Made by a program: the position numbers and the translations under genes. A stretch of DNA of 64,000 nt from Phyllobates terribilis. Taxonomy: Eukaryota. The number at the start of each line of letters is the position of its first letter. Position 1 is the stretch's first letter. This document shows positions 2,564-61,497 of the stretch, in pieces. The notes under the pieces are model-generated. The model saw only the letters and a list, made by a program, of their open reading frames with translations. It did no database searches and was not told the origin of the DNA. The stretch is taken from NCBI RefSeq assembly GCF_046119375.1, contig NW_027362762.1, positions 839,108,001 through 839,172,000 of the forward strand. Direction: 5' to 3'.

Positions 2564-2568
2564 GTTAT

Positions 2569-18142: not shown

Positions 18143-18643
18143 TAGTGTTGAGCCACCCCCGTAGTGTTCGAGTTCGGTTCGGTTCGTCGAACACCCGTGT
18201 GTTCGCCGAACTGTTCGTCGAACTGTTCGTCGAACACCTTCGAACACCATTAAAACCAATGGCAGGCAAACAAAAACACATAGAAACACATAGAAAACAC
18301 CTTCAAAGGTGTCCAAAAGCTGACAAACTGCTCAGAAGACACAACTAACACATGGAAAAGTGACAAGTACATATAGTCATGCGAAAAGAAAAGAGGTGGA
18401 GGAGTAAAAGGAGGGGGAGACACAGATATAGGCATGTCATGCCCTTCTAAAATCCAAAAAGTGAGAAGCCGACACGTTCAGTCCGCTCCTGCCCGTGCCA
18501 CCTCCGCGTCGCCGGGTTTGTGCCAGAGCCGCGGTGAACCCTGACGGCCAGCCCCCCTCTCCCAATACTGGTGCCTGTCCGCTGGTGGGTCGAGCGAGCC
18601 CCCCTGTGGTGGAGGCAGCTCTAAGCTTTTTAATTTAAATTGT

Positions 18644-18913
18644 CTCTCTAATTTGAATGAATACACTTTAAATCCATTTACAAGGATCTATTGGAGGGCA
18701 AGTCTCATGCCAGCAGCCGCGTAATTCCAGCTCCAGTAGCGTCCACTAAAGCTGCTGCAGTTAAAAAGCTTTTATAAGGATCGAGCTCAGCTGTCCACCG
18801 CAAGGCATCCTACTGCCAGTCCCAGCCCCTATGCCTTGGGGTGCCTCCTGATGCTCTTCACTGAATATCCGGTGGTCCCGAAGCATTTCCTTTGAAAAAA
18901 TTAAGTGTCCAAA
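18644..18913 (+). pseudogene. Diverged 18S rRNA gene fragment inside hAT copy 1
   Basis: ACTTTAAATCC..TTGGAGGGCAAGTCT..TGCCAGCAGCCGCG-TAATTCCAGCTCCA..GCTGCAGTTAAAAAGCT..GATGCTCTT..CCCGAAGC..TTTGAAAAAATTA is collinear with vertebrate 18S rRNA as I recall it (helix-18 region into the next expansion segment). Confidence 0.9.
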
Positions 18914-19027
18914 CTACAGGTGGTGTAGCTTGCTTAACAGCCGGGATAATCCGCTGACTAGCAGACACTGCTACTAGGCACAAAGTATTTCCTGGGCTAG
19001 ATGCAGTTAAAAATTTGTAATTAGATA

Positions 19028-20849
19028 CTCTCGTTGGATGCTGAGAAAGCATTCCATAGAGTCTCCTGGCACGCCATATATGATTCTCTTAAAAAGCTTG
19101 GGGTAGGTGTCTAGGGGACCCTTTTATAGCCAAAATCACGGCCCTGTATCGCAATACGTCACCTAGGCTGAAGATAAATGGAACTGTAGCACCCTGAGGG
19201 CTCGGTTGCTACAGAGGTATTGAACCTCACCCAGAGGTGTGATATCTCACTCTCAGGTAAGGATGTAGTGTGGATCAGGACCCGACACCTGCATGCATTA
19301 CACCACATTGCCGTGGGGCAGGGCGACCAATATGCCCCTGAGATGGGCACGACAATCCCTGTCCCTGGCTGGAGTGGGGGGAGGGAACACTGAGGAAGGG
19401 GAACCCTGTAGTGCAGGAGCAGGGAGGAAGCAGTTCCTGGGTGCATTGAGAAGGGAGTATAAAAGGTGGGCACCATCTTATTTCAGTGCAGAGAAGTCTG
19501 AGCAGAAGTGGCAGGGAGCAGGGGCTCTGCATGAGCTCTGCTCCGGAGGCGGGCCTAGTAACAGAGGCCCAGGCCTGGAAGAGGGAGAAGGAAGGAAGAG
19601 GAGCGGAGAAGGCTCCAGGAACGAGGAACGAAGGGATCCCAGGGATGCGGACGGGCGAGTCGCCACCGCACGCCCGAATCCACCTGCGTGGAGGGGTCAG
19701 GCCAAAGGGGGAGACCGGTCCCCGAAACTAGTGGAGGCAGGAAACGACCCTCAGCTAGAAACAGGAGGCTGTGACATTTTATGTGGCGCAGCCCCTCGCT
19801 ACACCCGCTAGGAAGGCACCACATAGGGTCAGGGAAACTGGCGCCAAGTTTACCAAGAGGAGGCCCGAGGCAGCCGGACAGAAGGGTTGGTAAGAAAGGC
19901 CAGACAAATGACACACAAAGGGGGTCCTGTGAAGCGCTCCAAAGTTATCTGGGAGTTGTCTGAGCCCCTCACCTGGTGAGCACAGTACGACTTGGGCAGC
20001 CGTTACCTGCAGACGTGGTCTGGATAATAAGAACTGTGAGTAAAGGCCCTGGACTGCATCACTGACTCCGTGTCGTTACTGCTGCTGCCCTGCACCATCA
20101 CCCCCATCCTCCACATACACTGCCCTGAGGCTATACTCCTCCCGTGGGGAGTTATGCTACGCTCTGCTGCACCCACAACACCAGCCTCAGGGGTCTGCCC
20201 TGGAGCGGCGGTTCACTCTGACCACAATCCACGGGTGGCATAGTCGGACATTTAAACATCAAAACCACATAAATAGTTCCGCCACTGGTTTGACCGCCCT
20301 GAGCCACGGAACCGGGTCGCCGCCACGGAGACTACAACCACCAGCATCCACCAAAAAGGGTCCGGCTCCGGGTGTCCCAAGGCCCAGGGGGCGCGTCAGA
20401 ACATTTTCATCACCTTTCACAATCACCAATGGGACAAGGCAGGGATGTTCTCTGTCCCCTCTCTTATACATCCTAGTGACGGAGCACCTGCTCTCATCAA
20501 TTCGCCATAACCCCAATATTAGGTGGATTGAGGTGGGAGGCACCGAGTACAAGTGCTCTCTATTTGCTGATGATGTCCTAGTATATATCACTCAATCACA
20601 TATATCCATCCATGCTGTTATGGCTGAAATAGATCACTTTGTTACATGGTCAAATTTTAAAATCAATGCAGCGAAGTCTGAGGCCCTTGATGTCTCCCTC
20701 CCCAAGTCCATATAGGATTCCATCCAGTCCAACTTTCCCTTTGCCTGGCCCTCACAGGGTATCAAATACTTAGGAATTCCTATTCATAGAGACCTCTCCC
20801 ATCTATGTTATCTTAATTTTGGGCCCTTTATTGAACAACTCCATACAGA
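19028..20849 (+). pseudogene. L1/Tx1-type RT fragment, split by a solo LTR
   Basis: LSLDAEKAFHRVSW..ALYRNTSPRLKING|TFSSPFTITNGTRQGCSLSPLLY..LFADD..IKYLGI. The frame is continuous once the LTR and one TSD copy are removed. Confidence 0.9.
19185..20398 (+). mobile_element. Gypsy-type solo LTR
   Basis: TGTAGCACCC..GGCCCAGGGGGCGCGTCA, 4-bp TSD GAAC (19181-19184 and 20399-20402), TATAAAA at ~19458. Termini resemble the LTRs of the element at 45873-53695. Confidence 0.9.
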
Positions 20850-22405
20850 CCACGGTTGGCAAGTTAGAACTGTAAGATTCACTACGTGAACCACTGGTGT
20901 TTTGTGGAAAAGCACATGTACACTGTGTTCCAAATTATTATGCAAAAAGTTTTTAGGAGTGATAAGGGAAGAATTTGTTTGTTTGTCAGTTAAACTCATT
21001 GATGGTGATGTGTGTCAGGGCTCTTTATATCACTGTAAGCAATTGCAGACACCTCTGCTAATTAGTTTGGTAGGTGTGTCCAATGAAAGGCAAGACTACT
21101 TAAGAAGGCTGTCTCACATTATTAAGCAGCCTACATTTTCTGCCAAAATGGGAAAGAAAAAGGATGTGTCGGCTGCTGAGAAGCAACAAATTGTGGAGTG
21201 TTTAGGTCAAGGCATGACTACAATCAACATTGTGCGATGATCAGGATGTAGTGTCTTGGCAATCAAGAAGTATGTAGCTGATTCACAGTACACACGTGTG
21301 CGTGCTGATAAGGGCAAATTGAGGACGCTTTCCTACAGGCAATTATGTCTGGTTGAAAGAGCAGCGGCAAAAAAGCCTTGTCATAGCAGCAGACAAGTTT
21401 TTGAAGCTGCTGGTGCCTCCAACGTCCCCCGAACAACAAGATGCAGGGTCCTTCAGAGGTTTGCAGCTGTGCATACGCCATCCTGTCGACCTCCTCTATC
21501 CACTTCACACAAGCAGAAACGGCTCCAGTGGGCCAAACATTACATGAAGACTGATTTCAAAACAGTTTTGTTCACGGATGAGTGCCGTGCAGCGCTCGAT
21601 GGTCCAGATGGATGGAGTGGAGGATGGCTGGTTGATGGACACCCCACGCAAACACGGCTACAGCGCCAACAAGGAGGAGGTGGAGTAATGTTTTGGGCTG
21701 GAATCATGGGGAGAGAGATTGTCGGTCCCTTTAGGATCCCTGAAGGCGCTAAAGATGAACTCCTTAATGTATGTGGATTTTCTCAAACAGCACTTCCTGC
21801 CATGGTTCAAGAAGAAGAACCGTGTATTTCACAGCAAGATCATTTTTTTGCATGATAATGCACCATCTCATGCTGCACATAAAACATCTGCATCTCTGGC
21901 TGATATGGGCATAAAAGGTGACAAACTTATGGTGTGATCCCCATGCTCCCCTGACCTCTACCCCATTCAGAACCTTTGGAGCATCATTAAAAGGAGTGTC
22001 TATGATGGCGGGAGGCAGTTCACATCTAAGCAACAGCTCTGGGAGGGTATTCTGTCCTCATGCAAAACAATTGAAGCAGAAACCATCCAAAACCTGACAA
22101 ATTCAATGGACGAGAGAGTTCAGAAGCTCCTTTCGAACAAGGGGTCCTATGTGAAAATGTAACATCACCTAGAATAAATTTTTGAGTTGAAAACTGTTTG
22201 ATTTCAGTTTCTAACAACCTGCTAATGCTTATAATTTCAAAAATGACCATTTTTTTGGTCTTTATTAAAATGAAAAGGTTGATCGAAAAGTTTGGGGGAT
22301 CTAAGAGTGTGGCAACCCAGTAGTCATGATTACTTCGAATTCTGACAATATGAGGGTCATGCTGCAGGTAGTGCAGCAAGAAGGCACTTATGTGTCTTGC
22401 GCATC
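20850..22405 (-). pseudogene. Relic of an older related hAT transposase in two pieces (20850-20920 and ~22294-22405), with a Tc1 between them
   Basis: The pieces are diverged homologues of 23183-23253 and ~23343-23451 (WVATLLDP; LHYLQHDPHIVRIR). Confidence 0.8.
20921..22281 (+). mobile_element. Tc1-type transposon, right TIR lost
   Basis: TA then CACTGTGTTCCAAATTATTATGC. Frameshifted transposase MGKKKDVS..VLFTDEC..FLHDNAPSH..DLYPIQNLW. Confidence 0.88.
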
Positions 22406-22409
22406 TCGG

Positions 22410-22685
22410 AGCCCCAAAATTATTTTCCGGGCTAGATGCAGCTAAAAATTATTATTAATTTTAAATCTGGTGAAGCTTTAGTATAGATGTCCTAATAGGA
22501 TCAGTGCTGCACACTGCTACAAAGCCCAAATTATTTTCCAGTCAAGATACAGATAAACATGATTAGTAATTTTAAATCTGGTGGAGCTTATTATAGATGG
22601 CCTAATAGAATCAGTGCTGCACACTGCTACAAAGCCCAAATTATTTTCCAGCCAAGATACAGATAAACATGATTAGTAATTTGAA
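22410..22685 (+). repeat. About 2.5 diverged monomers related to the ~110-bp internal satellite
   Basis: CACACTGCTACAAAGCCCAAATTATTTT..AGATRCAG repeats with a ~111-bp period. Confidence 0.7.
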
Positions 22686-22730
22686 AGCTTAAAATGGTTG
22701 GTAGGGTGATTTTAACCAATCATCAAGCTT

Positions 22731-25700
22731 TTACTCTCCCCAGGATGACACAGGGGTAGAAAAGTCGTTTCGGATCCATGATTTGTTCATCTTTATGAAC
22801 GTGAGTCTGTCTACGTTATCAGTGGAGAGCCGCGTGCGCTTATCTGTCAGCACACCACCAGCAGCGCTGAACACACGTTCAGACAGAACGCTGGCTGCGG
22901 GGCATGACAAGATCTCCAAGGCGTAAGTGGCTAGCTCCGGCCATTTATCCAGATTGGAAGCCCAAAAAGAGCAAGGGTCCAGTGACACAGTCATGGCTTC
23001 AATGTTTACTTGGAGATACTCCTGTACCATCGTCTCTAGACGTTGACTATGTGTCAGACTTCTTGTCTCCTGTGGCCTTGCAAAGGATGGGCTAAAAAAG
23101 TGGTGAAATGATTCCGCAAAATTGATGTTACCAGCAGATACTGTGGTTCTGTTACGGTTTGAGTGCTGAACACTTGACGGTCCCACGGTTGGCAAGTTGG
23201 AACTGTGAGATTCACTACGTGCACCACTGGTATTTTGTGGAAAAGCACATGTAAGATTCTGCAACAGTCTCTGCTGATACTCCTGCATGCGTGCATCCCT
23301 TTCTATGGCAGGAATAATTTCTGCAAATTTACTTTTGTACCGGGGATCTAACAGTGTGGCAACCCAGTAGTCAGGATTATTTCTAATTCTCACAATTCGA
23401 GGGTCATGTTGCAGGTAGTGCAGCAAGAAGGCACTTATGTGTGTTGCGCATCCAGGAGCACCAAGTCCCTGTTGTGTTGGTGGCGAGGTAACAATCATGC
23501 TTCCTTCCTCTGTCCTCTCCCCCCAACCTCGCACAACAGAAATGTGATCAAGGTCTCCCTCATCTGATGAGTCTTCCATCAGTTCGTCCTCCACTTCTTC
23601 TTGGGCTCCTGCACCTTCCTCACTAGTTTGGCTGCTACCATGCGCCCTGGTAAAACCATCTCCCCCACCCTCACATGCCTGCCGCCTTGGTGCTGCCGAC
23701 CGTCTGGACCTTGCAGATGTTAGCCCTTCCGCATACAGCTCCTCCTCCTCTACTTCCTCCACCTCCTCTTGTGCCACCACCTGACTCCGAATTCTGTTTA
23801 ACATGTGCTCCAGCATGTAAATCACCGGAATAGTCATGCTGATAATGGCATCGTCAGCACTAAACATCTTCGTCGCCATTTCAAAACTGTGCAGAAGGGT
23901 GCATAGGTCCCTGATCTGAGACCACTCCTCCAGCGTGATTTGCCCCACCTCTGGATCTCGTTGGCCCAGGCTATACATCAGAACGTATTGCACCAGGGCT
24001 TGTCGGTGCTGCCACAGTCGCTGCAACATGTGCAGAGTTGAATTCCACCGGGTAGGCACATCGCATTTTAGCCGGTGAAGTGGCAGGCCCAACGACTTCT
24101 GTAGAGATGTAAGTCGCTGAGCTGCGGGATGCGAACGGCGGAAGTGAGCACACAGCGACCGTGCCCTCTGCAGAAGGCCATCTAGTCTGGGATAGTGGGC
24201 TAAAAATTGCTGGACAACCAGGTTCAACACGTGAGCCATACAAGGCACGTGTGTGACATTGCCCCGGCGAAGGGCCGCACCCAGGTTTGCAGCATTGTCG
24301 CACACGGCCTTCCCTTTCAGGTCCAGTGGAGACAACCATTCATGAAATTGGTTCTCCAGAGCTGACCACAACTCCTCAGCTGTGTGACTCACATTTCCCA
24401 GACATTTCAATGTAAAAACCGCCTGATGATGTTGAGCCCTACTGCCAGCATAGTAAGGAGGTGTGCAGGATCCATTCTGCGCAGTTATAAAGCTTGTGGC
24501 ATGACCAGACAGGCTTTGGGTTCAGGTGGAAGACCGAGGGGAGGTTGAGGAGGCAGAAGCAGTGGAGGAACTTTGACATAAAGAGGATTGACGCACAACT
24601 CGTGGGGACGGCAAGACTTGGACAGCAGCCCCTTGTCCTGCTGTCACCATAGTTACCCAGTGCCCATTCAGCGACATGTAACGCCCCTGTCCATGCCTAC
24701 TCGTCCAAGTGTCTGTGGTGAAATGCACCCTGTCACACACAGAGTTTCTCAAAGAAGCGGTGATGTTGTGTGCGACATGCTGGTGGAGCGCAGGCACACC
24801 TTTCTTTGAGAAGTAGTGCCGACTGGGCATCTGGTACTGGGGCACTGCGACGGACATAAGGTCTCGAAAATCCTCTGTGTCCACCAGGCGGAAAGGCAGC
24901 ATTTCTGTAGCCAAGAGCTTGCAGATGGTGAAATTCAACCTCTTAGCTTTCTCATGGCTAGGAGGAAATGGTCTTTTACTTGTCCACATCTGAGGGACCG
25001 AGGGCTGGCTATTGTGCTTAGATGGGGTTGATAAGGGTGTCCCCGGCAAACTGCCGGTCTGTGAGGAATATGCAGGCGGACATGTTAGGTTGCCTTGATC
25101 CAAAGGTGGTGCTATCGATGTCGGACAGCGCTCAACACCAGCTGGTGTTACCACCTCCAAAGAAAATGATGACCTGCCAATCACGCTGGCTGTTGCGGGT
25201 AAAGAGGTGGCAGGTCTGCGCCCCAAAACAGGTGTGACTGCTGTCCCCCCAGTCACAGAGGATGAAGAGGCCGCGGATGCACAAGATATGGCAGACGGTG
25301 GTTGGCCCGGCCGGCTAGGCCGCATTGTAGCACACTGAGCTTCCCACTGCAACTTATGCTTCATGTCCATGTGCCGGTTCATGCATGAAGTACTCAAACT
25401 ATGTATTTTTTGGCCTCTACTTAGCTTTTGCAGACAAATGTTACAGATAACATGAGCTGGGTCATCTTTATCGATCTGAAAAAATGCCTAGGCTATGCAA
25501 GGCTTAGCACCCATGCGACCTGAAGAGCCACCACGACTTGTGGTGAGAGGCAGAGTTGTGTTTGAGGATGCAGTTGTTGACGTGCTTCCAGTACTACGTC
25601 TCTGTCCAGGAAGGTGCAACCTGACCTCGTCGTCACTAGCATCTTCCTCCACCTCCTCTGCTGACCTCATCTCTTGGCTGACTGTGGGTTGACAGTAAGT

Positions 25701-26429
25701 GGGATCTCCAACCTCATCATCATCACCCTGTGCGTTATCTCACCCGTCGTCCTCAGAGCCAACCTGTTCCTGCCCTGACGAAAAACTAAAGTTGTCGCTC
25801 CAATCAGGTATTTGAGTCTTATCATCGTCTTCCTCATTGTCTCCACCAACAGGAGTTACAGTTTGGGAATGAGGGTCTACATTATGGTCAGAACCTTCTG
25901 CGTCTGGTCCTGGATCCGACTCATAAAGATTCTGGGCATCAGTGCAGATCATTTCCTCGTCTGGATTCACAGAAGCGCTGGAGTCGACCTCTGATTCCCA
26001 GGCTATAGTATGAGTAAACAGCTCTGCAGACTCAACCATCTGTTCTACCTCATACTCAGACGGGCAGCTGGAGATTTGGGAGCTGTGAGGAAGCAAGTGC
26101 GATTGGGGTGACACCTTTGAGGACTGGAGTATTTGTGATGTTGAAGTTGATGTGGAGGAGAGCCCACTTAAAGGAGCACTTGATATCCATTGAAGCACCT
26201 GCTGTTTTTGTGCCTCATCTGGAATTTGTAGCGATTGGCGTGGCCGTAAGAAAGGGATCTTATCACATTGTCCGCTAAAAGAAGTAGACATTTTAGTTTG
26301 GCTGGAAGATGGTCTTTCTTCTGCAGATGTTACTGTTGCTTTAACACCTACCCCACGGACACAACCTTTTTTCCCCTTCCCAACACGCCTATTCACTTTT
26401 CCACCAGCAGCAGGCCTTTTTCCACTCAT
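22731..26429 (-). pseudogene. hAT (Ac-like) transposase, 1232 codons in one frame with two premature TGA stops
   Basis: BED finger (WAFF..C..C..H..KH), TTDTWTS, VCDNAAN, CMAH, RWNS, SERVFS and the C-terminal dimerisation region. ORFs 25740-26429, 24522-25397 and 22731-24410 share one frame, and copy 2 has TGT and TGC at the two stop positions. Confidence 0.95.
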
Positions 26430-26545
26430 TTTGGTGGTTAACTAATTCACAACTCTGGAGTTGTTTGCACAAAAAAACAATGGATGGGAACCGAGCAGAG
26501 CTGAGTGGCCAAACTGTGGTATTAGGCCAAAACTATTGGCTGGGT

Positions 26546-29500
26546 TAGATGCAGAAAAAAATTATATTCAATTTGCAACCTGATGGAGGTCAGTATAGAT
26601 GGACTAATAGAACAAGTCCCACACAAAGCTAGAAGCCCAAATATTTTTTCAGAGGTAGATGCAGAAAAATTTTTTATTCAGTTTGCAACCTGATGGAGGT
26701 CTGTATAGATGGATTAATAGAACAAGTCACACACACAGCTGCAAGCCCAATATTTTTTCAGAGGTAGATGCAGAAAAAAAATATATTCAGTTTGCAACCT
26801 GATGGAGGTCAGTATAGATGGACTAATAGAGAAAGTCCCACACACTGCTAGAAGGCCAAATATTTTTTCAGAGCTTGATGCAGACAAAAAATTATTTTGA
26901 ATTTGCAACCTGATGGAGGTCAGTATAGGTGGACTAATAGAACAAGTCCCACACACTGCTAGAAGGCCAAATATTTTTTCAGAGCTAGATGCAGAAAAAA
27001 ATTATATTCAGTTTGCAACCTGATGGAGGTCTGTATAGATGGATTAATAGAACAAGTCCCACACACAGCTAGAAGCCCAAATATTTTTTCAGAGGTAGAT
27101 GCAGATAAAAATTATTTTTAATTTGCAACCTGATGGAGGTCAGTATAGATGGACTAATAGAGAAAGTCCCACACACTGCTAGAAGACCAAATATTTTTTC
27201 AGAGATAGATGCAGATAAAAATTATTTTTAATTTGCAACCTGATGTAGGTCAGTATAGATGGACTAATAGAGAAAGTCCCACACACTGCTAGAAGGCCAA
27301 ATATTTTTTTCAGAGCTAGATGCAGATAAAAATTATATTCAATTTGCAACCTGATGGAGGTCAGTATAGATGGACTAATAGAACAAGTCCCACACACAGC
27401 TAGAAGCCCAAATATTTTTTCAGAGGTACTGTAGATGCAGATAAAAATTATTTTTAATTTGCAACCTGATGGAGGTCAGTATAGATGGACTAATAGAACA
27501 AGTCCCACACACAGCTAGAAGCCCAATATTTTTTCAGAGGTAGATGCAGAAAAAAATATATTCAGTTTGCAACCTGATGGAGGTCAGTATAGATGGAGTA
27601 ATAGAACAAGTCCCACACACAGCTAGAAGCCCAAATATTTTTTCAGAGGCAGATGCAGATAAAAATTATTTTTAATTTGCAACCTGATGGAGGTCAGTAT
27701 AGATGGACTAATAGAGAAAGTCCCACACACTGCTAGAAGGCCAAATATTTTTTCAGAGCTAGATGCAGATAAAAATTATATTCAATTTGCAACCTGATGG
27801 AAGTCAGTATAGATGGACTAATAGAACAAGTCCCACACACAGCTAGAAGCCCAAATATTTTTTCAGAGGTACTGTAGATGCAGATAAAAATTATTTTTAA
27901 TTTGCAACCTGATGGAGGTCAGTATAGATGGACTAATACAACAAGTCCCACACACAGCTAGAAGCCCAATATTTTTTCAGAGGTAGATGCAGAAAAAAAT
28001 ATATTCAGTTTGCAACCTGAAGGAGGTCAGTATAGATGGAGTAATAGAACGAGTCCCACACACAGCTAGAAGCCCAAATATTTTTTCAGAGGTAGATGCA
28101 GATAAAAATTATTTTTAATTTGCAACCTGATGGAGGTCAGTATAGATGGACTAATAGAGAAAGTCCCTCACACTGCTAGAAGGCCAAATATTTTTTCAGA
28201 GCTAGATGCAGATAAAAATTATATTCAATTTGCAACCTGATGGAGGTCAGTATAGATGGACTAATAGAGAAAGTCCCACACACTGCTGGAAGGCCAAATA
28301 TTTTTTCAGAGCTAGATGCAGATAAAAATTATATTCAATTTGCAACCTGATGGAGGTCAGTATAGATGGACTAATAGAACAAGTCCCACACACAGCTAGA
28401 AGCCCAAATATTTTTTCAGAGGTACTGTAGATGCAGATAAAAATTATTTTTAATTTGCAACCTGATGGAGGTCAGTATAGATGGACTAATAGAGAAAGTC
28501 CCACACACTGCTAGAAGGCCAAATATTTTTTCAGAACTAGATGCAGATAAAAATTATTTTTAATTTGCAACCTGATGGAGGTCAGTATAGATGGACTAAT
28601 AGAGAAAGTCCCACACACTGCTAGAAGGCCAAATATTTTTTCAGAGCTAGATGCAGATAAAAATTATATTCAATTTGCAACCTGATGGAGGTCAGTATAG
28701 ATGGACTAATAGAACAAGTCCCACACACAGCTAGAAGCCCAAATATTTTTTCAGAGGTACTGTAGATGCAGATAAAAATTATTTTTAATTTGCAACCTGA
28801 TGGAGGTCAGTATAGATGGACTAATACAACAAGTCCCACACACAGCTAGAAGCCCAATATTTTTTCAGAGGTAGATGCAGAAAAAAATATATTCAGTTTG
28901 CAACCTGATGGAGGTCAGTATAGATGGAGTAATAGAACAAGTCCCACACACAGCTAGAAGCCCAAATATTTTTTCAGAGGTAGATGCAGATTAAAATTAT
29001 TTTTAATTTGCAACCTGATGGAGGTCAGTATAGATGGACTAATGGAGAAAGTCCCACACACTGCTAGAAGGCCAAATATTTTTTCAGAGCTAGATGCAGA
29101 TAAAAATTATATTCAATTTGCAACCTGATGGAGGTCAGTATAGATGGACTAATAGAGAAAGTCCCACACACTGCTAGAAGGCCAAATATTTTTTCAGAGC
29201 TAGATGCAGATAAAAATTATATTCAATTTGCAACCTGATGGAGGTCAGTATAGATGGACTAATAGAACAAGTCCCACACTCAGCTAGAAGCCCAAATATT
29301 TTTTCAGAGGTACTGTAGATGCAGATAAAAATTATTTTTAATTTGCAACCTGATGGAGGTCAGTATAGATGGACTAATAGAGAAAGTCCCACACTCTGCT
29401 AGAAGGCCAAATATTTTTTCAGAGCTAGATGCAGATAAAAATTACTTTTAATTTGCAACCTGATGGAGGTCAGTATAGATGGACTAATAGAGAAAGTCCC

Positions 29501-32500
29501 ACACACTGCTAGAAGGCCAAATATTTTTTCAGAGCCAGATGCAGATAAAAATTATATTCAATTTGCAACCTGATGGAGGTCAGTATAGATGGACTAATAG
29601 AACAAGTCCCACACACAGCTAGAAGCCCAAATATTTTTTCAGAGGTACTGTAGATGCAGATAAAAATTATATTCAATTTGCAACCTGATGGAGGTCAGTA
29701 TAGATGGACTAATAGAACAAGTCCCACACACAGCTAGAAGCCCAAATATTTTTTCAGAGGTACTGTAGATACAGATAAAAATCATTTTTAATTTGCAACC
29801 TGATGGACGTCAGTATAGATGGACTAATAGAGAAAGTCCCACACACTGCTAGAAGGCCAAATATTTTTTCAGAGCTAGATGCAGAAAAAAATTATATTCA
29901 GTTTGCAACCTGATGGAGGTCAGTATAGATGGACTAATAGAGAAAGTCCCACACACTGCTAGAAGGCCACATATTTTTTCTGAGGTAGATGCAGAAAAAA
30001 ATATATTCAGTTTGCAACCTGATGGAGGTCTGTATAGATGGATTAATAGAACAAGTCCCACACACAGCTAGAAGCCCAATATTTTTTCAGAGGTAGATGC
30101 AGAAAAAAATATATTCAGTTTGCAACCTGATGGAGGTCAGTATAGATGGACTAATACAACAAGTCCCACACACAGCTAGAAGCCCAATATTTTTTCAGAG
30201 GTAGATCCAGAAAAAAATATATTCAGTTTGCAACCTGATGGAGGTCTGTATAGATGGATTAATAGAACAAGTCCCACACACAGCTAGAAGCCCAATATTT
30301 TTTCAGAGGTAGATGCAGAAAAAAATATATTCAGTTTGCAACCTGATGGAGGTCAGTATAGATGGACTAATACAACAAGTCCCACACACAGCTAGAAGCC
30401 CAATATTTTTTCAGAGGTAGATGCAGAAAAAAATATATTCAGTTTGCAACCTGATGGAGGTCAGTATAGATGGAGTAATAGAACAAGTCCCACACACAGC
30501 TAGAAGCCCAAATATTTTTTCAGAGGTAGATGCAGATTAAAATTATTTTTAATTTGCAACCTGATGGAGGTCAGTATAGATGGACTAATAGAGAAAGTCC
30601 CACACACTGCTAGAAGGCCAAATATTTTTTCAGAGCTAGATGCAGATAAAAATTATATTCAATTTGCAACCTGATGGAGGTCAGTATAGATGGACTAATA
30701 GAGAAAGTCCCACACACTGCTAGAAGGCCAAATATTTTTTCAGAGCTAGATGCAGATAAAAATTATATTCAATTTGCAACCTGATGGAAGTCAGTATAGA
30801 TGGACTAATAGAACAAGTCCCACACACAGCTAGAAGCCCAAATATTTTTTCAGAGGTACTGTAGATGCAGATAAAAATTATTTTTAATTTGCAACCTGAT
30901 GGAGGTCAGTATAGATGGACTAATACAACAATTCCCACACACAGCTAGAAGCCCAATATTTTTTCAGAGGTAGATGCAGAAAAAAATATATTCAGTTTGC
31001 AACCTGAAGGAGGTCAGTATAGATGGAGTAATAGAACAAGTCCCACACACAGCTAGAAGCCCAAATATTTTTTCAGAGGTAGATGCAGATAAAAATTATT
31101 TTTAATTTGCAACCTGATGGAGGTCAGTATAGATGGACTAATAGAGAAAGTCCCTCACACTGCTAGAAGGCCAAATATTTTTTCAGAGCTAGATGCAGAT
31201 AAAAATTATATTCAATTTGCAACCTGATGGAGGTCAGTATAGATGGACTAATAGAGAAAGTCCCACACACTGCTGGAAGGCCAAATATTTTTTCAGAGCT
31301 AGATGCAGATAAAAATTATATTCAATTTGCAACCTGATGGAGGTCAGTATAGATGGACTAATAGAACAAGTCCCACACACAGCTAGAAGCCCAAATATTT
31401 TTTCAGAGGTACTGTAGATGCAGATAAAAATTATTTTTAATTTGCAACCTGATGGAGGTCAGTATAGATTGACTAATAGAGAAAGTCCCACACACTGCTA
31501 GAAGGCCAAATATTTTTTCAGAACTAGATGCAGATAAAAATTATTTTTAATTTGCAACCTGATGGAGGTCAGTATAGATGGACTAATAGAGAAAGTCCCA
31601 CACACTGCTAGAAGGCCAAATATTTTTTCAGAGCTAGATGCAGATAAAAATTATATTCAATTTGCAACCTGATGGAGGTCAGTATAGATGGACTAATAGA
31701 ACAAGTCCCACACACAGCTAGAAGCCCAAATATTTTTTCAGAGGTACTGTAGATGCAGATAAAAATTATTTTTAATTTGCAACCTGATGGAGGTCAGTAT
31801 AGATGGACTAATACAACAAGTCCCACACACAGCTAGAAGCCCAATATTTTTTCAGAGGTAGATGCAGAAAAAAATATATTCAGTTTGCAACCTGATGGAG
31901 GTCAGTATAGATGGAGTAATAGAACAAGTCCCACACACAGCTAGAAGCCCAAATATTTTTTCAGAGGTAGATGCAGATTAAAATTATTTTTAATTTGCAA
32001 CCTGATGGAGGTCAGTATAGATGGACTAATGGAGAAAGTCCCACACACTGCTAGAAGGCCAAATATTTTTTCAGAGCTAGATGCAGATAAAAATTATATT
32101 CAATTTGCAACCTGATGAAGGTCAGTATAGATGGACTAATAGAGAAAGTCCCACACACTGCTAGAAGGCCAAATATTTTTTCAGAGCTAGATGCAGATAA
32201 AAATTATATTCAATTTGCAACCTGATGGAGGTCAGTATAGATGGACTAATAGAACAAGTCCCACACTCAGCTAGAAGCCCAAATATTTTTTCAGAGGTAC
32301 TGTAGATGCAGATAAAAATTATTTTTAATTTGCAACCTGATGGAGGTCAGTATAGATGGACTAATAGAGAAAGTCCCACACACTGCTAGAAGGCCAAATA
32401 TTTTTTCAGAGCTAGATGCAGATAAAAATTACTTTTAATTTGCAACCTGATGGAGGTCAGTATAGATGGACTAATAGAGAAAGTCCCACACACTGCTAGA

Positions 32501-35500
32501 AGGCCAAATATTTTTTCAGAGCCAGATGCAGATAAAAATTATATTCAATTTGCAACCTGATGGAGGTCAGTATAGATGGACTAATAGAACAAGTCCCACA
32601 CACAGCTAGAAGCCCAAATATTTTTTCAGAGGTACTGTAGATGCAGATAAAAATTATATTCAATTTGCAACCTGATGGAGGTCAGTATAGATGGACTAAT
32701 AGAACAAGTCCCACACACAGCTAGAAGCCCAAATATTTTTTCAGAGGTACTGTAGATACAGATAAAAATCATTTTTAATTTGCAACCTGATGGACATCAG
32801 TATAGATGGACTAATAGAGAAAGTCCCACACACTGCTAGAAGGCCAAATATTTTTTCAGAGCTAGATGCAGAAAAAAATTATATTCAGTTTGCAACCTGA
32901 TGGAGGTCAGTATAGATGGACTAATAGAGAAAGTCCCACACACTGCTAGAAGGCCACATATTTTTTCTGAGGTAGATGCAGAAAAAAATATATTCAGTTT
33001 GCAACCTGATGGAGGTCTGTATAGATGGATTAATAGAACAAGTCCCACACACAGCTAGAAGCCCAATATTTTTTCAGAGGTAGATGCAGAAAAAAATATA
33101 TTCAGTTTGCAACCTGATGGAGGTCAGTATAGATGGACTAATACAACAAGTCCCACACACAGCTAGAAGCCCAATATTTTTTCAGAGGTAGATCCAGAAA
33201 AAAATATATTCAGTTTGCAACCTGATGGAGGTCTGTATAGATGGATTAATAGAACAAGTCCCACACACAGCTAGAAGCCCAATATTTTTTCAGAGGTAGA
33301 TGCAGAAAAAAATATATTCAGTTTGCAACCTGATGGAGGTCAGTATAGATGGACTAATACAACAAGTCCCACACACAGCTAGAAGCCCAATATTTTTTCA
33401 GAGGTAGATGCAGAAAAAAATATATTCAGTTTGCAACCTGATGGAGGTCAGTATAGATGGAGTAATAGAACAAGTCCCACACACAGCTAGAAGCCCAAAT
33501 ATTTTTTCAGAGGTAGATGCAGATTAAAATTATTTTTAATTTGCAACCTGATGGAGGTCAGTATAGATGGACTAATAGAGAAAGTCCCACACACTGCTAG
33601 AAGGCCAAATATTTTTTCAGAGCTAGATGCAGATAAAAATTATATTCAATTTGCAACCTGATGGAGGTCAGTATAGATGGACTAATAGAGAAAGTCCCAC
33701 ACACTGCTAGAAGGCCAAATATTTTTTCAGAGCTAGATGCAGATAAAAATTATATTCAATTTGCAACCTGATGGAGGTCAGTATAGATGGACTAATAGAA
33801 CAAGTCCCACACACAGCTAGAAGCCCAAATATTTTTTCAGAGGTACTGTAGATGCAGATAAAAATTATTTTTAATTTGCAACCTGATGGAGGTCAGTATA
33901 GATGGACTAATAGAGAAAGTCCCACACACTGCTAGAAGGCCAAATATTTTTTCAGAGCTAGATGCAGATAAAAATTATTTTTAATTTTCAACCTGATGGA
34001 GGTCAGTATAGATGGACTAATAGAGAAAGTCCCACACACTGCTAGAAGGCCAAATATTTTTTCAGAGCCAGATGCAGATAAAAATTATATTCAATTTGCA
34101 ACCTGATGGAGGTCAGTATAGATGGACTAATAGAACAAGTCCCCCACACAGCTAGAAGCCCAAATATTTTTTCAGAGGTACTGTAGATGCAGATAAAAAT
34201 TATTTTTAATTTGCAACCTGCTGGAGGTCAGTATAGATGGACTAATACAACAAGTCCCACACACAGCTAGAAGCCCAATACTTTTTCAGAGGTAGATGCA
34301 GAAAAAAATATATTCAGTTTGCAACCTGATGGAGGTCAGTATAGATGGAGTAATAGAACAAGTCCCACACACAGCTAGAAGCCCAAATATTTTTTCAGAG
34401 GTAGATGCAGATAAAAATTATTTTTAATTTGCAACCTGATGGAGGTCAGTATAGATGCACTAATAGAGAAAGTCCCACACACTGCTAGAAGGCCAAATAT
34501 TTTTTCAGAGCTAGATGCAGATAAAAATTATATTCAATTTGCAACCTGATGGAGGTCAGTATAGATGGACTAATAGAGAAAGTCCCACACACTGCTAGAA
34601 GGCCAAATATTTTTTCAGAGCTAGATGCAGATAAAAATTATATTCAATTTGCAACCTGATGGAGGTCAGTATAGATGGACTAATAGAACAAGTCCCACAC
34701 ACAGCTAGAAGCCCAAATATTTTTTCAGAGGTACTGTAGATACAGATAAAAATCATTTTTAATTTGCAACCTGATGGAGGTCAGTATAGATGGACTAATA
34801 GAGAAAGTCCCACACACTGCTAGAAGGCCAAATATTTTTTCAGAGCTAGATGCAGAAAAAAATTATATTCAGTTCGCAACCTGATGGAGGTCAGTATAGA
34901 TGGACTAATAGAGAAAGTCCCACACACTGCTAGAAGGCCACATATTTTTTCAGAGGTAGATGCAGAAAAAAATATATTCAGTTTGCAACCTGATGGAGGT
35001 CTGTATAGATGGATTAATAGAACAAGTCCCACACACAGCTAGAAGCCCAATATTTTTTCAGAGGTAGATGCAGAAAAAATATATTCAGTTTGCAACCTGA
35101 TGGAGGTCAGTATAGATGGACTAATACAACAAGTCCCACACACAGCTAGAAGCCCAATATTTTTTCAGAGGTAGATCCAGAAAAAAATATATTCAGTTTG
35201 CAACCTGATGGAGGTCTGTATGAACGGATTAATAGAACAAGTCCCACACACAGCTAGAAGCCCAATATTTTTTCAGAGGTAGATGCAGAAAAAAATATAT
35301 TCAGTTTGCAACCTGATGGAGGTCAGTATAGATGGACTAATACAACAAGTCCCACACACAGCTAGAAGCCCAATATTTTTTCAGAGGTAGATGCAGAAAA
35401 AAATATATTCAGTTTGCAACCTGATGGAGGTCTGTATAGATGGATTAATAGAACAAGTCCCACACACAGCTAGAAGCCCGATATTTTTTCAGAGGTAGAT

Positions 35501-35670
35501 GCAGAAAAAAATATATTCAGTTTGCAACCTGATGGAGGTCAGTATAGATGGACTAATACAACAAGTCCCACACACAGCTAGAAGCCCAATATTTTTTCAG
35601 AGCTAGATGCAGAAAAAAATTATATTCAATTTGCAACCTGATGGAGGTCAGTATAGATGGACTAATAGAA
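26546..35670 (+). repeat. Tandem array of ~110-bp monomers (~82 units, 9125 bp) inside hAT copy 1
   Basis: Monomer TAGATGCAGAWAAAA..TTTGCAACCTGATGGAGGTCAGTATAGATGGACTAATAGARMAAGTCCCACACA..GCTAGAAG..AAATATTTTTTCAGAG. Period 110 measured at 28201 and 28311. Confidence 0.97.
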
Positions 35671-36587
35671 TGATGCTATGCCCAAAAGATTTTACTTCAC
35701 TAGGTGCAGTAAAAAAATTGGTATTCTATACACAGGTGGTATATCTTGCAACACAGATAGGCTACTCCACTGACTAACACACTCTGCAATAGGCCAAAAA
35801 GGATTAGCTTTGCTAGATTCAGCCAAATGCTGTGAAAAAAACTTGCACAGCACTGGCACAGACCTGCCTGGCAAAAACTGATAGGAACTGATGTAACCTA
35901 GTCCTGAAAAGGACTCCAATTACAATTAGTCTTTACTCCCACAATCTATCTATTTAAGAGCACAGACCTGCCTGATAAAAGTCGTAGGAAATGCTGTAAC
36001 CTAGTCCTTAAAAGGACTGCAATCACAACTATTCCCTACTCCCAAGCTATCTGTAGATTTGTGCGAAAATTGGCTTGAAATTAACAAGGTATAGCGCACA
36101 CAGCAACAGCGGTGCCGTCTAACACGCAGCTGCAGCAGTGAGAAAATGGTGGCGACGGGGAAAATGGCTTGGTCTTATAGGGCAAGGACATGTGACATAC
36201 ACTGCCAATGACACATGCCCTTGCTTGTGTGAAAAAAAGCACTTCGCTCCGTGTGTGCGCTGCTGATAGGCTGACAGATTGCACCTCCCCACTGTAAATG
36301 CGGGAAAGAGAAAAAAAAAATGGAGATCTTCATTGTTCCTGCAGAGATCCATCCCCTGCCCCTCCCCCCACCCCGCTGTACACTCAAACTGCGTATTAAC
36401 ATTAATTTTCATCATTACTGAGAAAAAATCCAGTTATGATTTTGGTGCACGAACAGTTATCGAACATAACCTCGAACAGCCGAATTTTTCTCAAATTGTT
36501 CGTGTTCGCCGAACGGCTCGAACACCGCCCAAAACAGCTCGAATTTGAGATTGGCGAACAGTTCGAGTAGAACAACGTTCATCTCTA

Positions 36588-40946: not shown

Positions 40947-40951
40947 AAAAC

Positions 40952-52692: not shown

Positions 52693-52697
52693 AAAGT

Positions 52698-53695: not shown

Positions 53696-55949
53696 CATAT
53701 ATTACTGTACTAGGTGTACATACTAAATATTTAATAAATCATGATATTGTTAAATTTGTTTCCATTTTTCATCATTTGAATCAATAACATGTCTTCTTCT
53801 TGGTGCTGCAATTTTAATGTCGAAAATTGTTTATGGCTATATGTAAATACCATATGGTAACCAGTGGAAATAAAACACTGCACTGACTGACTTTATAAGC
53901 TTTTTAAAAAGTAAGAGTAGTCCATAAATTATCCCTTTTAGTAGCAGATGCTCGCCTTGCTGCTGTTTATACACAGGCAATGTGCAAGGAAGAAGTCATG
54001 GCATACATACAAGTAGTGGTCCAAAAATCATCCCTGATTGTGGAGCAGCAACAGGCTTGTTGTTTGTTAAATGAAAAAGCTATAGATTTTTAACAAACCT
54101 TCCAAAAGGTATCCCTTTTGTTGGAGCAGCCATAGATTTGCTGTTTAGAAAGAGAAAAGCAATGGCTTTTTAAACAAAATATGCAAAAAAGTATTCTCTT
54201 TTTTGGTAGGGTTCATATACTCTGTACAAAGTAGTGTTCTAATCAGCAATACAGTATAGCCATAGCATACAGGTATGCTATGCAGTGGTAGTGGCATCAA
54301 CCACACAGTATATAATTAGATGGGAGAGGCAAGGAGATGTCTGACTATGTAGGGCCACCACTGGCAGCCTTGACAGCAATACAGTATAGCTATAGACCAC
54401 AATGGACAGACAGGAAATTTGTGGCTCTCTATAGACAGAGGCAATGACAGCAACTGAAAAGTGGAGAATGTGATGGGATAGGCATAGAGATGTCCAGCTA
54501 TATAGGGCCAACAGTGGCAGACCAAGCAGCAGTTGTGCAGTATAAATATAACATGATTAACAGGCAGGTATCTGGTTAGGCATGGAGAATGAGCTCTGAC
54601 AGCATCAGAACAGGGTTGAGCACAATCAACAGAAAAGCCGAGTTGTAAAGTGCATCAGGTTGGTGCAGTGGCAGATAAAACATTTGGTCCATCATGTCAT
54701 AGACACTGTAATCTCTTCTGCTGACTAGGCTAGTTGTTGTAACCCTAGAACTGGCACAGGCAGGGGAGTGTTGGCTCTGCGGGGTAGTGAAAATGGGGTT
54801 CTGGTCTGTCTTGAATTGATAAGTCCATGTCCCCCTCCATTTCTACCCTCTTCCCCCTCCTCCACATCCTGCACCAAGTAACATTGACCTTGAAGGTCCC
54901 CAACAGCCACAGGACAGAATTGAATATGTATAAATTGCCTACTTCCTCTATTCATTGTTGCATCTTTGTGAGTGTTTTTTTCCAACATAAGTAGCATGAT
55001 AGCATTGGTGATGCCACAGTTCTCCCTACTGACAAGCTTATTAGAGAGCTCAGTAGATGAAACATGTCCCTCAACAGCTGCTAATGGTGGATTTCAAAAT
55101 AATCTAAGCTCCAGTTTGCCTGCTGAATGATATAATCAGTCACTGTTTTACTTATGCAGCATTGAAATCCAGCATATTATTATGGCATTGCAGATCAGGC
55201 AGCACTCAGGCAGGAGGTCATGTTTCTGTAAAGCCTGAAGGGTGTGCTTCTCCACATAAGAATTGTTGATATGAGCAGGCACATCATTGTCAGTTGCAGC
55301 TAATGGGAAGCCATCCAGGGTGATATTTTCTGCTTAATGCAGGTGAGCAACTCATCTGCTTTTTGTCTTTTTTCTGCTATGCACACAAGCTATAAAACTG
55401 CTTTGCAGTGCTTTATATTGCAAGAATGAAAATAATTATGGTGGGGAGTAGTGTTGAGCCACCCCCGTAGTGTTCGAGTTCGGTTCGGTTCGTCGAACAC
55501 CCGTGTGTTCGCCGAACTGTTCGTCGAACTGTTCGTCGAACACCTTCGAACACCGTTAAAACCAATGGCAGGCAAACAAAAACACATAGAAACACATAGA
55601 AAACACCTTCAAAGGTGTCCAAAAGCTGACAAACTGCTCAGAAGACACAACTAACACAAGGAAAAGTGACAAGTACATATAGTCATGCGAAAAGAAAAGA
55701 GGTGGAGGAGTAAAAGGAGGGGGAGACACAGATATAGGCATGTCATGCCCTTCTAAAATCCAAAAAGTGAGAAGCCGAGACGGCCAGTCCGCTCCTGCCC
55801 GTGCCACCTCCGTGTCGCCGGGTTTGTGCCAGAGCCGCGGTGAACCCTGACGGCCAGCCCCCCTCTCCCAATACTGGTGCCTGTCCGCTGGTGGGTCGAG
55901 AGAGCCCCCCTGTGGTGGAGGCAGCTCTAAGCTTTTTAATTTAAATTGT

Positions 55950-56219
55950 CCCTCTAATTTGAATGAATACACTTTAAATCCATTTACAAGGATCTATTGG
56001 AGGGCAAGTCTCATGCCAGCAGCCGCGTAATTCCAGCTCCAGTAGCGTCCACTAAAGCTGCTGCAGTTAAAAAGCTTTTATAAGGATCGAGCTCGGCTGT
56101 CCACCGCAAGGCATCCTAGTGCCAGTCCCAGCCCCTATGCCTTGGGGTGCCTCCTGATGCTCTTCACTAAGTATCCCGTGGTCCCGAAGCATTTCCTTTG
56201 AAAAAATTAAGTGTCCAAA
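55950..56219 (+). pseudogene. Diverged 18S rRNA fragment inside hAT copy 2
   Basis: Same sequence and same offset from the TIR as 18644-18913. Confidence 0.9.
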
Positions 56220-56333
56220 CTACAGGTGGTGTAGCTTGCTTAACAGCCGGGATAATCCGCTGACTAGCAGACACTGCTACTAGGCACAAAGTATTTCCTG
56301 GGCTAGATACAGTTAAAAATTTGTAAGTAGATA

Positions 56334-61381: not shown

Positions 61382-61497
61382 TTTGGTGGTTAACTAATTC
61401 ACAACTCTGGAGTTGTTTGCACAAAAAAACAATGGATGGTAACCGAGCAGAGCTGAGTGGCCAAACTGTGGTATTAGGCCAAAACTATTGGCTGGGT

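What the first reader, a model, noticed from the sequence alone, without database searches (positions are those of the whole stretch)
18143..36587. Cargo-carrying composite hAT family that transposes as a unit (second copy at 55449-63360)
Two copies with different perfect 8-bp TSDs share both arms and the same ordered cargo: 18S rRNA fragment, L1 RT fragment, Gypsy solo LTR at the identical site, and a satellite array. The cargo was therefore acquired before transposition and moved with the element; an 18.4-kb span lies between one TSD pair. This makes the element a vehicle spreading rDNA sequence, an LTR promoter and satellite seeds. I cannot tell whether the family has already been described.
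Basis: partly seen in the sequence, partly recalled or inferred. Interest (0 to 1): 0.85.

Follow-up and report, generated by a model that had tools for sequence, protein, structure and literature searches.

The report
Frog hAT transposon carrying hitch-hiking DNA
Two copies of one large cut-and-paste (hAT) transposon of a poison-frog genome carry their own decayed transposase gene, debris of other mobile elements, a piece of 18S rDNA and a 110-bp satellite array; it is a real but known kind of cargo-laden hAT.

Summary
Copies at 18143-36587 and 55449-63360 end at identical termini, have different perfect 8-bp target duplications, and share an 18S fragment, an L1-like RT fragment split by a solo Gypsy-type LTR, and a 110-bp tandem array at the same site.

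On the minus strand each copy has a hAT transposase gene (BED finger, Hermes-like core, hATC domain). It is broken by three stop codons in copy 1 and lacks its C-terminal end in copy 2. GTTCG/CGAAC repeats cluster only at the four ends, so this is one autonomous-type hAT element, not a two-element composite.

The foreign pieces lie in its 3' non-coding part and the array in its 5' part. They predate the split of the copies (1.45% divergence) and moved passively.

The arrays differ tenfold (82 versus 8 monomers) and were remodelled separately.

Long hAT elements carrying fragments of other transposons are already described in Anolis (hobo_AC, 9-15 kb), and satellites born inside transposons are known. 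I rate this a new member of a known kind. I could not count the family in its genome or compare it with Dfam or Repbase.

The parts
18143..36587 (-). Copy 1 of the hAT element (18,445 bp). The strand given is that of its transposase gene.
   Evidence: The ends of homology to copy 2 coincide with the 8-bp target duplication CTCTCCAC at 18135-18142 and 36588-36595.
18143..18245 (.). Left terminus: short imperfect terminal inverted repeat (8 of the first 11 nt complementary to the right end) plus 12 GTTCG/CGAAC subterminal repeats.
   Evidence: Motif density is 40 per kb here against 1.3 per kb in the whole window.
18590..18953 (+). 18S rRNA fragment. The well-aligned part covers roughly model positions 500-800.
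   Evidence: Rfam RF01960, 69.7 bits (gathering score 50).
18965..19025 (+). Remnant of about 60 bp of the element's own 110-bp 'sat-like' repeat, lying between the 18S and L1 pieces.
   Evidence: 75-88% identity to 22417-22686, E=6e-7. The same piece occurs in copy 2 at 56271-56321.
19025..20849 (+). L1-like reverse-transcriptase fragment. It is truncated at both ends and interrupted by the solo LTR, and its upstream piece also carries stops and a frame change.
   Evidence: Pfam RVT_1 positions 70-96 upstream of the LTR (E=0.005) and 111-192 downstream (E=1.4e-14). PDB best hits are L1 ORF2p residues 650-741, E=6e-16.
19185..20398 (-). Solo LTR of a Ty3/Gypsy-type element (1,214 bp), nested in the L1 fragment.
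   Evidence: TG..CA ends and the 4-bp repeat GAAC on both sides. About 290 bp plus both termini are 72-74% identical to the LTR of the complete Gypsy at 45873-53695.
20850..20920 (.). 71-bp duplicate of a stretch from the 3' third of the transposase gene (94% identical to it).
20921..22294 (+). Tc1/mariner-like element present in copy 1 only. It is preceded by TA, lacks a recognisable right end, and its transposase frame is interrupted at least twice.
   Evidence: Pfam HTH_Tnp_Tc3_2 E=8.7e-5. ORF pieces, sequence. Absent from copy 2.
22295..22417 (.). 123-bp duplicate of a second stretch from the 3' third of the transposase gene (90% identical to it).
22417..22686 (.). 2.4 units of a 110-bp 'sat-like' repeat just downstream of the transposase stop codon. 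It is about 76% identical to the main array.
   Evidence: TRF and BLAST.
22731..26429 (-). hAT transposase gene, copy 1 (1,232 codons). It has its natural C-terminal end but carries 3 premature stop codons, no frameshift, and 2 in-frame indels relative to copy 2.
   Evidence: Pfam Dimer_Tnp_hAT E=1.5e-15. Hermes transposase E=5e-19, including the segment holding the third catalytic residue. Break counts.
26546..35670 (.). 110-bp satellite array of 82.6 units, organised as a block of about 27 monomers (2.99 kb) repeated about 3 times.
   Evidence: TRF. Block identities are 97.2%, 96.0% and 93.4%. For 33 of 82 monomers the nearest neighbour lies 27 monomers away.
35671..36587 (.). Right arm (5' side of the gene): a 103-bp repeat x1.8 at 35856-36044, 9 GTTCG/CGAAC repeats at 36450-36561, and the terminal inverted repeat.
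   Evidence: It is 99.2% identical to copy 2.
55449..63360 (-). Copy 2 of the element (7,912 bp).
   Evidence: Target duplication GTGGGGAG at 55441-55448 and 63361-63368. Collinear with copy 1.
55896..56259 (+). 18S rRNA fragment, copy 2.
   Evidence: Rfam hit at 55929-56048, 63 bits. Coordinates mapped from copy 1.
56331..58152 (+). L1-like RT fragment with the nested solo LTR (56491-57701), copy 2.
   Evidence: The flanks at both LTR junctions and the GAAC repeat are the same as in copy 1.
58106..61381 (-). hAT transposase gene, copy 2: an open frame of 1,091 codons with a BED zinc finger. One internal deletion has removed the C-terminal part (hATC domain and third catalytic residue).
   Evidence: Pfam zf-BED E=3.3e-10 and no Dimer_Tnp_hAT. 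Hermes core E=5.5e-7. Comparison with copy 1.
61498..62443 (.). 110-bp satellite array, copy 2 (8.6 units).
   Evidence: TRF. The flanks and the truncated last unit are the same as in copy 1.
62444..63360 (.). Right arm, copy 2.

Best explanation
Both loci are insertions of one family of hAT cut-and-paste transposons, in a dendrobatid (poison-frog) genome.

Layout of the element, read along its minus-strand gene:
- a 5' terminus with subterminal repeats;
- a 110-bp tandem array;
- a transposase gene of about 1,230 codons (long N-terminal extension, BED zinc finger, RNase-H-like core, hATC domain);
- a few more 110-bp-type repeats;
- a 3' non-coding region holding foreign DNA;
- the 3' terminus.

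Inferred mechanism, from knowledge of Hermes and other hATs. The transposase binds the GTTCG/CGAAC subterminal repeats through its BED finger. It cuts at the two termini and joins them across an 8-bp staggered target. Everything between the termini is carried along passively.

The foreign DNA consists of an 18S rDNA piece and an internal piece of an L1 already carrying a solo Gypsy-type LTR. It entered the 3' repeat region of an ancestral element, together with a partial duplication of the element's own gene. The route was most likely DNA-level 'filler' capture during repair. The Tc1-like element lies in the segment that only copy 1 has, so whether it entered before or after the copies separated is open.

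The element then went on transposing, giving these two copies. They lie 18.9 kb apart in the same orientation, which fits the short-range jumps known for hATs.

Afterwards each copy decayed neutrally:
- Copy 1 acquired stop codons.
- Copy 2 lost 2.26 kb by recombination between the internal duplicates, either before or after it inserted.
- The two arrays were remodelled independently; one now measures 9.1 kb.

Shown: anatomy, target duplications, shared junctions, protein homologies and divergences. Inferred: the route of capture, the order of events and the jump between linked sites.
For: hAT identity:
- 8-bp duplications that both fit the hAT target pattern nTnnnnAn (pattern as given in PMC10368747).
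- Clusters of the subterminal motif occur in these two copies only at their four ends. The one other cluster in the window, at 10054-10127, lies outside both copies.
- zf-BED and Dimer_Tnp_hAT domains.
- Hermes transposase matches for the core and the C-terminal part.
- 6,826 relatives; full-length anuran ones have the architecture BED + PF27039 + hATC, and the longest (about 1,135-1,144 residues) approach this gene's size.

Cargo present before the copies split:
- Identical junction flanks in both copies.

The LTR entered by integration:
- TG..CA ends and the 4-bp repeat GAAC. The complete Gypsy in the window also has a 4-bp duplication, CATA.

Capture rather than simple retrotransposition of the L1:
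- The fragment lacks both ends.
- It is bounded on one side by a remnant of the element's own repeat.
- It is bounded on the other side by a duplicate of transposase-gene sequence.

Neutral decay:
- 28 non-synonymous versus 5 synonymous differences between the copies, and 3 stop codons in copy 1.

Real insertion:
- Copy 1 splits an older retrovirus-like element. Integrase-core homology ends at its right boundary, and env homology lies beyond its left boundary.

Host:
- The closest fragments of this transposase are in Ranitomeya and Phyllobates.
- The neighbouring Gypsy pol is 95-96% identical to Phyllobates terribilis proteins.
Against: - Only two copies were seen. No further copy, cargo-free relative or intact gene could be examined, because no amphibian genome DNA could be fetched.
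- The terminal inverted repeat is weak (8 of 11 nt).
- The 2.99-kb blocks of the copy-1 array differ by 2.8-6.6%, more than the 1.45% between the copies. The long array might therefore predate the split, with copy 2 having shrunk. Array turnover makes this clock unreliable.
- In copy 2 the junction repeat carries the gene-side variant at all four diagnostic sites. The recombination model therefore needs a crossover at the extreme edge of the repeat.
- The assembled length of a 9-kb array could be wrong.
Confidence: 0.85

Rival explanations
1. The element is a non-autonomous composite: two hAT arms enclose unrelated cargo, and it is moved only by a transposase made elsewhere.
For: Neither copy can now encode a complete transposase. 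At least the last movement of a copy-2-like form, if it lost its C-terminal part before inserting, would have needed a transposase supplied in trans.
Against: The interior contains the family's own gene, in the position and orientation expected for an autonomous hAT. In copy 2 its frame is open over 1,091 codons. The cargo takes up only about 2.3 kb of shared sequence.
Confidence: 0.1
2. A macrotransposon. Two separate hAT elements that flanked a stretch of host DNA moved together using their outer ends.
For: The unusual size (18.4 kb) and the mixed content. hAT ends of related families are common in the window: a 1,097-bp element at 12599-13695 and ends near 2552-2582.
Against: There are no internal termini and no internal cluster of the subterminal motif in either copy. 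There is one gene, one left end and one right end.
Confidence: 0.03
3. The foreign pieces arrived by ordinary nested insertions, one after another, into an element sitting in the genome. Later deletions trimmed them. No repair-mediated capture was involved.
For: The LTR certainly arrived by integration, since it has a 4-bp duplication. The Tc1-like element sits next to a TA. Nested insertions are the rule in this window: copy 1 itself lies inside a retrovirus-like element that also holds a non-LTR RT.
Against: The L1 piece has neither a 3' end with a poly(A) tail nor a target duplication. It abuts a duplicated piece of the transposase gene, and the 18S piece has no retrotransposition hallmarks. 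Several independent trimming deletions would be needed.
Confidence: 0.3
4. A segmental duplication or an assembly artefact produced the second copy.
For: The copies lie in one 64-kb window, in the same orientation.
Against: Homology stops exactly at the termini. The flanks are unrelated and the target duplications differ. The copies also differ by a 2.26-kb segment, a Tc1-like element and array structure.
Confidence: 0.01

Closest known systems
hobo_AC elements of Anolis carolinensis (hAT superfamily; Novick et al., Genome Biol Evol 2011, PMC3014272)
   Same: Autonomous-type hAT elements made unusually long (9-15 kb) by incorporated extraneous DNA. That DNA includes partial class 1 and class 2 transposons older than the carrier. 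The authors note that amplification of the carrier multiplies the elements it carries, and they call this filler DNA and cargo.
   Different: The host is a lizard, not a frog, and the relationship of the transposases was not tested. No rDNA piece or internal satellite array is reported there ('tandem repeat' and 'minisatellite' occur nowhere in the text). Copy 1 here is longer (18.4 kb), but half of it is array.
Hermes and other Ac-type hAT transposons (mechanistic model)
   Same: 8-bp target duplication fitting nTnnnnAn, short imperfect terminal repeats, short subterminal repeats bound by the BED finger, and an RNase-H-like core plus a C-terminal dimerisation region.
   Different: The protein here is about twice as long, with an N-terminal extension of about 300 residues ahead of the BED finger. 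Sequence identity to Hermes is low. The element is 3 to 6 times larger.
Transposons that carry and seed tandem repeats: Tetris of Drosophila virilis (PMC4079207), the DTC84 MITE of the clam Donax trunculus (PMC3879986), and the Xenopus MITE-driven satellite (Scalvenzi and Pollet, cited in PMC12054243)
   Same: A tandem repeat sits inside a DNA transposon, its copy number varies between insertions, and it can grow into a satellite-like array.
   Different: Those carriers are foldback or miniature non-autonomous elements. Here the carrier is a gene-bearing hAT. Free-standing arrays of this 110-bp repeat outside the element have not been shown.
Anuran 'ZBED4-like / ZBED6-like' gene models (for example XP_077144717.1 of Ranitomeya variabilis)
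   Same: Same protein clade. Fragments are 74-87% identical, and full-length relatives are 33-46% identical with BED + PF27039 + hATC.
   Different: Those are automatic gene annotations, probably of transposon copies. None is described as an element with termini and cargo.

Membership tests
hAT superfamily (Ac-type) | 8-bp target-site duplication | tested here: met
   Perfect 8/8 in both copies: CTCTCCAC and GTGGGGAG.
hAT superfamily (Ac-type) | Target pattern nTnnnnAn | tested here: met
   Both duplications have T at position 2 and A at position 7 (pattern from PMC10368747). Only two sites were available.
hAT superfamily (Ac-type) | Short terminal inverted repeats | tested here: inconclusive
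   8 of the first 11 nt are complementary in both copies. This is short and imperfect, as in many hATs, but weak on its own.
hAT superfamily (Ac-type) | Short subterminal repeats concentrated at both ends | tested here: met
   12 and 9 GTTCG/CGAAC motifs within about 100-140 bp of the ends, 20-30 times the window average. There is no cluster inside the element.
hAT superfamily (Ac-type) | Transposase with BED zinc finger, RNase-H-like core and C-terminal hAT dimerisation region | tested here: met
   zf-BED E=3.3e-10 and Dimer_Tnp_hAT E=1.5e-15. Hermes E=5.5e-7 for the core and 5e-19 for the piece with the C-terminal part.
Autonomous (self-sufficient) copy | Uninterrupted, complete transposase frame | tested here: not met
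   Copy 1 has 3 premature stops. Copy 2 has lost the C-terminal part through one deletion.
L1 clade of non-LTR retrotransposons (the RT fragment) | Reverse transcriptase closest to L1 ORF2p | tested here: met
   All significant PDB hits are L1 ORF2p (E=6e-16), and R2 was not reported. Another RT in the window scores best to R2, so the test discriminates. The comparison set is limited to solved structures.
Ty3/Gypsy solo LTR | TG..CA ends, a short target duplication, no internal region, and similarity to the LTR of an element with PR-RT-RH-IN order | tested here: met
   Ends and GAAC repeat. 72-74% identity over about 290 bp to the LTR at 45873-46870. The pol of that element has RT, RNase H and integrase in that order.
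Eukaryotic SSU rRNA | Score above the Rfam gathering threshold | tested here: met
   69.7 and 63 bits against 50, but only a degenerate piece of about 280-360 nt out of 1,831 positions.
Satellite DNA | Long head-to-tail array with higher-order structure, abundant in the genome | tested here: inconclusive
   The array and the 27-monomer higher-order block are shown. Genome-wide abundance and free-standing arrays cannot be tested with these tools.
hobo_AC-like cargo-bearing hATs (Anolis) | Common descent of transposase and termini with hobo_AC | not testable with these tools
Only the likeness in organisation is established.

The most novel reading that the evidence does not exclude
The family may be a recently mobile hAT that moved while already carrying a multi-kilobase 110-bp array, giving a unit of 17 kb or more. 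That would be larger than the 9-15 kb reported as the longest hATs. Its copies would then act as seeds from which satellite arrays grow at many loci of the giant poison-frog genomes. This would be a direct vertebrate example of a gene-bearing DNA transposon dispersing a satellite together with rDNA and LTR sequence.
Probability: 0.15. Interest if true: 0.55.

Novelty: new member of a known kind. Interest (0 to 1): 0.3.

Why it matters
The element shows how a cut-and-paste transposon in a very large amphibian genome can multiply sequences that cannot move by themselves: an rDNA piece, dead retroelement fragments and a tandem repeat. It also shows the tandem repeat at two lengths, 1 kb and 9 kb, in two sister insertions, which is the raw material for models of how satellites are born.

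For annotation, it warns that 'ZBED4/6-like' gene models and isolated 18S, L1 and LTR hits in these genomes can be parts of one hAT family.

None of this changes current understanding. Both phenomena are documented elsewhere.

Tried and rejected
- Fetching related loci from frog genomes through proteins P0005, P0011, P0001 and P0002 returned no DNA, because the sample files are too large.
- The copy-2 frame is not on record as a called gene.
- The DNA collections on offer (viral, metagenome, bacterial genomes, phages, plasmids, E. coli) hold no amphibian sequence and were not scanned. No copy census or Dfam/Repbase comparison was therefore possible.
- PDB searches with the two short upstream L1 pieces (29 and 25 residues) found nothing. 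Pfam gave a weak but position-consistent RVT_1 match for one of them.
- One search failed because one of my references contained stop codons. I dropped both untested references (18861-19024 and 20713-20850) and resent the other two pieces.
- I looked for monomer-level orthology between the two arrays to date the expansion. None is left: the best match of the copy-2 array anywhere in copy 1 is 93%. The timing stays open.
- The idea that the 18S and L1 pieces form one template-switch retrocopy was dropped, because a remnant of the element's own repeat separates them.
- The segmental-duplication and two-element composite readings were rejected.


Full report
OBSERVATION

The window has no N and is 44% G+C. 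Self-comparison shows that 55449-63360 is collinear with 18143-36587:
- The left 2.78 kb is 97.9% identical.
- The gene block is 98.9% identical.
- The right 0.92 kb is 99.2% identical.
- Together this is 102 differences in about 7,040 aligned unique bases, or 1.45%.

Homology begins and ends at the same bases in both copies. These ends are bracketed by perfect 8-bp direct repeats that differ between the copies (CTCTCCAC and GTGGGGAG). The flanks are unrelated.

The minus strand of copy 2 holds an open frame of 1,091 codons. It has a BED zinc finger and a core that matches the Hermes transposase.

The same gene in copy 1 runs from 26429 down to 22731. It ends with a hAT dimerisation domain. 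That domain aligns with the Hermes segment containing the third catalytic residue.

State of the two genes:
- Copy 1 carries 3 premature stop codons, no frameshift, and 2 in-frame indels relative to copy 2.
- The copies differ by 28 non-synonymous and 5 synonymous changes, which indicates neutral decay.
- Copy 2 lacks the C-terminal part, because a 2.26-kb segment present in copy 1 is missing.

The protein has 6,826 relatives in the representative library. Full-length anuran relatives are 33-46% identical, carry names such as 'ZBED4-like' and 'ZBED6-like', and have the architecture BED + PF27039 + hATC; the longest are about 1,135-1,144 residues. Only fragments of 74-87% identity exist, in Ranitomeya and Phyllobates gene models.

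The neighbouring complete Gypsy element has a pol 95-96% identical to Phyllobates terribilis proteins. The host is therefore a dendrobatid frog.

hAT HALLMARKS

- Both target duplications fit nTnnnnAn. This is the preference described for Hermes (PMC10368747).
- The first 11 nt of the two ends are complementary at 8 positions.
- GTTCG/CGAAC motifs occur 12 and 9 times within about 100-140 bp of the ends, against 1.3 per kb in the window.
- Within these two copies, clusters of this motif occur only at their four ends. The window's one other cluster, at 10054-10127, lies outside both copies.
- In Hermes, such subterminal repeats are the binding sites of the BED finger.
- The lack of internal ends excludes a two-element composite.

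THE FOREIGN DNA

All of it lies between the left terminus and the gene's stop codon.

1. An 18S piece passes the Rfam threshold in both copies. It aligns well over roughly model positions 500-800.
2. An L1-like RT fragment follows.
   - The piece downstream of the LTR matches RVT_1 positions 111-192, and L1 ORF2p residues 650-741 at E=6e-16.
   - One piece upstream matches RVT_1 positions 70-96.
   - The LTR therefore sits inside the RT.
   - The fragment has neither its 5' nor its 3' end.
3. The LTR (19185-20398) has TG..CA ends and the 4-bp repeat GAAC on both sides.
   - It resembles, at 72-74% over about 290 bp and at both tips, the LTR of the complete Gypsy at 45873-53695.
   - That Gypsy also made a 4-bp duplication.
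   - In copy 2 the flanking sequence at both LTR junctions is identical to that in copy 1.
4. Between the 18S and L1 pieces lies a remnant of about 60 bp of the element's own 110-bp-type repeat. 2.4 units of this repeat also follow the stop codon.
5. To the right of the L1 piece lie two short duplicates of transposase-gene sequence, 71 and 123 bp, at 94% and 90% identity. In copy 1 a Tc1-like element separates them.

Taken together, the L1-LTR block and a partial gene duplicate are embedded in what was a small repeat array downstream of the gene. I read this as filler acquired during DNA repair rather than as a clean retrotransposition. This is inference. The alternative, serial nested insertions with later trimming, keeps about 0.3.

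The duplicates are 6-10% diverged from their coding originals. This is far more than the copies differ from each other. The rearrangement is therefore much older than the split, and the element kept moving with it.

Copy 2 is best explained by recombination between the duplicate and its original. One caveat applies: its junction carries the gene-side variant at all four diagnostic sites.

THE ARRAY

- In both copies it starts after the same flank and ends in the same truncated unit. It was therefore present in the common ancestor.
- Copy 1 has 82 full monomers, built as a block of about 27 monomers (2.99 kb) repeated about three times.
- Copy 2 has 8 monomers.
- Monomers are closer within an array than between arrays. 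Every copy-2 monomer has its nearest neighbour (0-7% different) inside its own array and a more distant one (3.6-8%) in copy 1.
- No stretch of copy 1 matches the copy-2 array better than 93%. Both arrays were therefore remodelled after separation.
- The 2.8-6.6% difference between blocks exceeds the 1.45% between copies. I therefore cannot say whether the long array grew in place or was already long when the element moved.

CONTEXT

Copy 1 lies inside an older retrovirus-like element on the minus strand. RT, RNase H and the end of the integrase core lie to its right, and env to its left. This confirms it as an insertion.

The two copies are 18.9 kb apart in the same orientation. This fits the known tendency of hAT elements to jump to linked sites (my own knowledge; not tested).

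COMPARISON WITH WHAT IS KNOWN

Novick et al. (PMC3014272) describe hobo_AC hAT elements of Anolis. These are 9-15 kb long because they incorporated extraneous DNA, including partial class 1 and class 2 transposons. The authors point out that the carrier multiplies what it carries.

Tandem repeats inside DNA transposons that grow into satellites are known from:
- Tetris (PMC4079207);
- DTC84 (PMC3879986);
- a Xenopus MITE (cited in PMC12054243).

Poison-frog genome papers report abundant hATs: 3.9% of the Dendrobates tinctorius assembly and 255 Mb in Oophaga pumilio. Neither paper uses the words 'satellite' or 'nested', and none of their passages on hAT describes a family of this structure.

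The finding is thus a new member of a known kind.

LIMITS

- Only two copies were seen.
- There was no access to amphibian genome DNA, Dfam or Repbase.
- Array length depends on the assembly.

SLIPS, STATED AS REQUIRED

1. An earlier count gave the coordinates of the copy-1-only segment and of the repeat that bounds it. This amounts to the place where the copy-2 gene is cut short. It stands as written and is not repeated here.
2. I also read mentally across the LTR insertion in the L1 fragment, and checked the reading frame across the hAT insertion in the retrovirus-like host. None of this was written to a file, sent to a tool or used as evidence. The evidence given rests on pieces compared apart.

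Noticed in passing
window 45873-53695: A complete Ty3/Gypsy element on the minus strand. It has 998-bp LTRs that are 99.6% identical, a 4-bp duplication CATA, a 1,418-codon open pol frame (protease, RT, RNase H, integrase) and a gag frame with a zinc knuckle. Its pol is 95-96% identical to Phyllobates terribilis proteins, so it looks very young.
   Followed up: partly
window 12599-13695: A 1,097-bp non-autonomous hAT with perfect 16-bp terminal inverted repeats and a perfect 8-bp duplication GTAATTGT. Its first 11 nt equal the left tip of the large element, but its subterminal motif is different (CGAGC/GCTCG type). It is a related but distinct family.
   Followed up: partly
window 2-2582: An older relic of a related hAT on the plus strand. 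Positions 2-390 and 596-1273 are 73-76% identical at the DNA level to the transposase gene of the large element. Tandem repeats of about 133 bp follow. Two hAT-like tips lie head to head around 2552-2582.
   Followed up: no
window 16400-18142 and 36588-40100: The host of copy 1 is a retrovirus-like element on the minus strand, with RT, RNase H, part of the integrase core and an env-like frame (TLV_coat). It is bounded by a 108-bp repeat of 97% identity at 16432-16539 and 39949-40056. It also carries a separate non-LTR RT (36974-38518, closest to R2 proteins) between RNase H and integrase.
   Followed up: partly
window 10054-10127: A further cluster of five GTTCG/CGAAC motifs, probably the end of another hAT copy of the same or a close family. 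No partner end was identified.
   Followed up: no
window 40635-41985: A group of direct and inverted repeats of 130-230 bp at 85-92% identity, in an A+T-rich stretch. Their nature is unknown.
   Followed up: no
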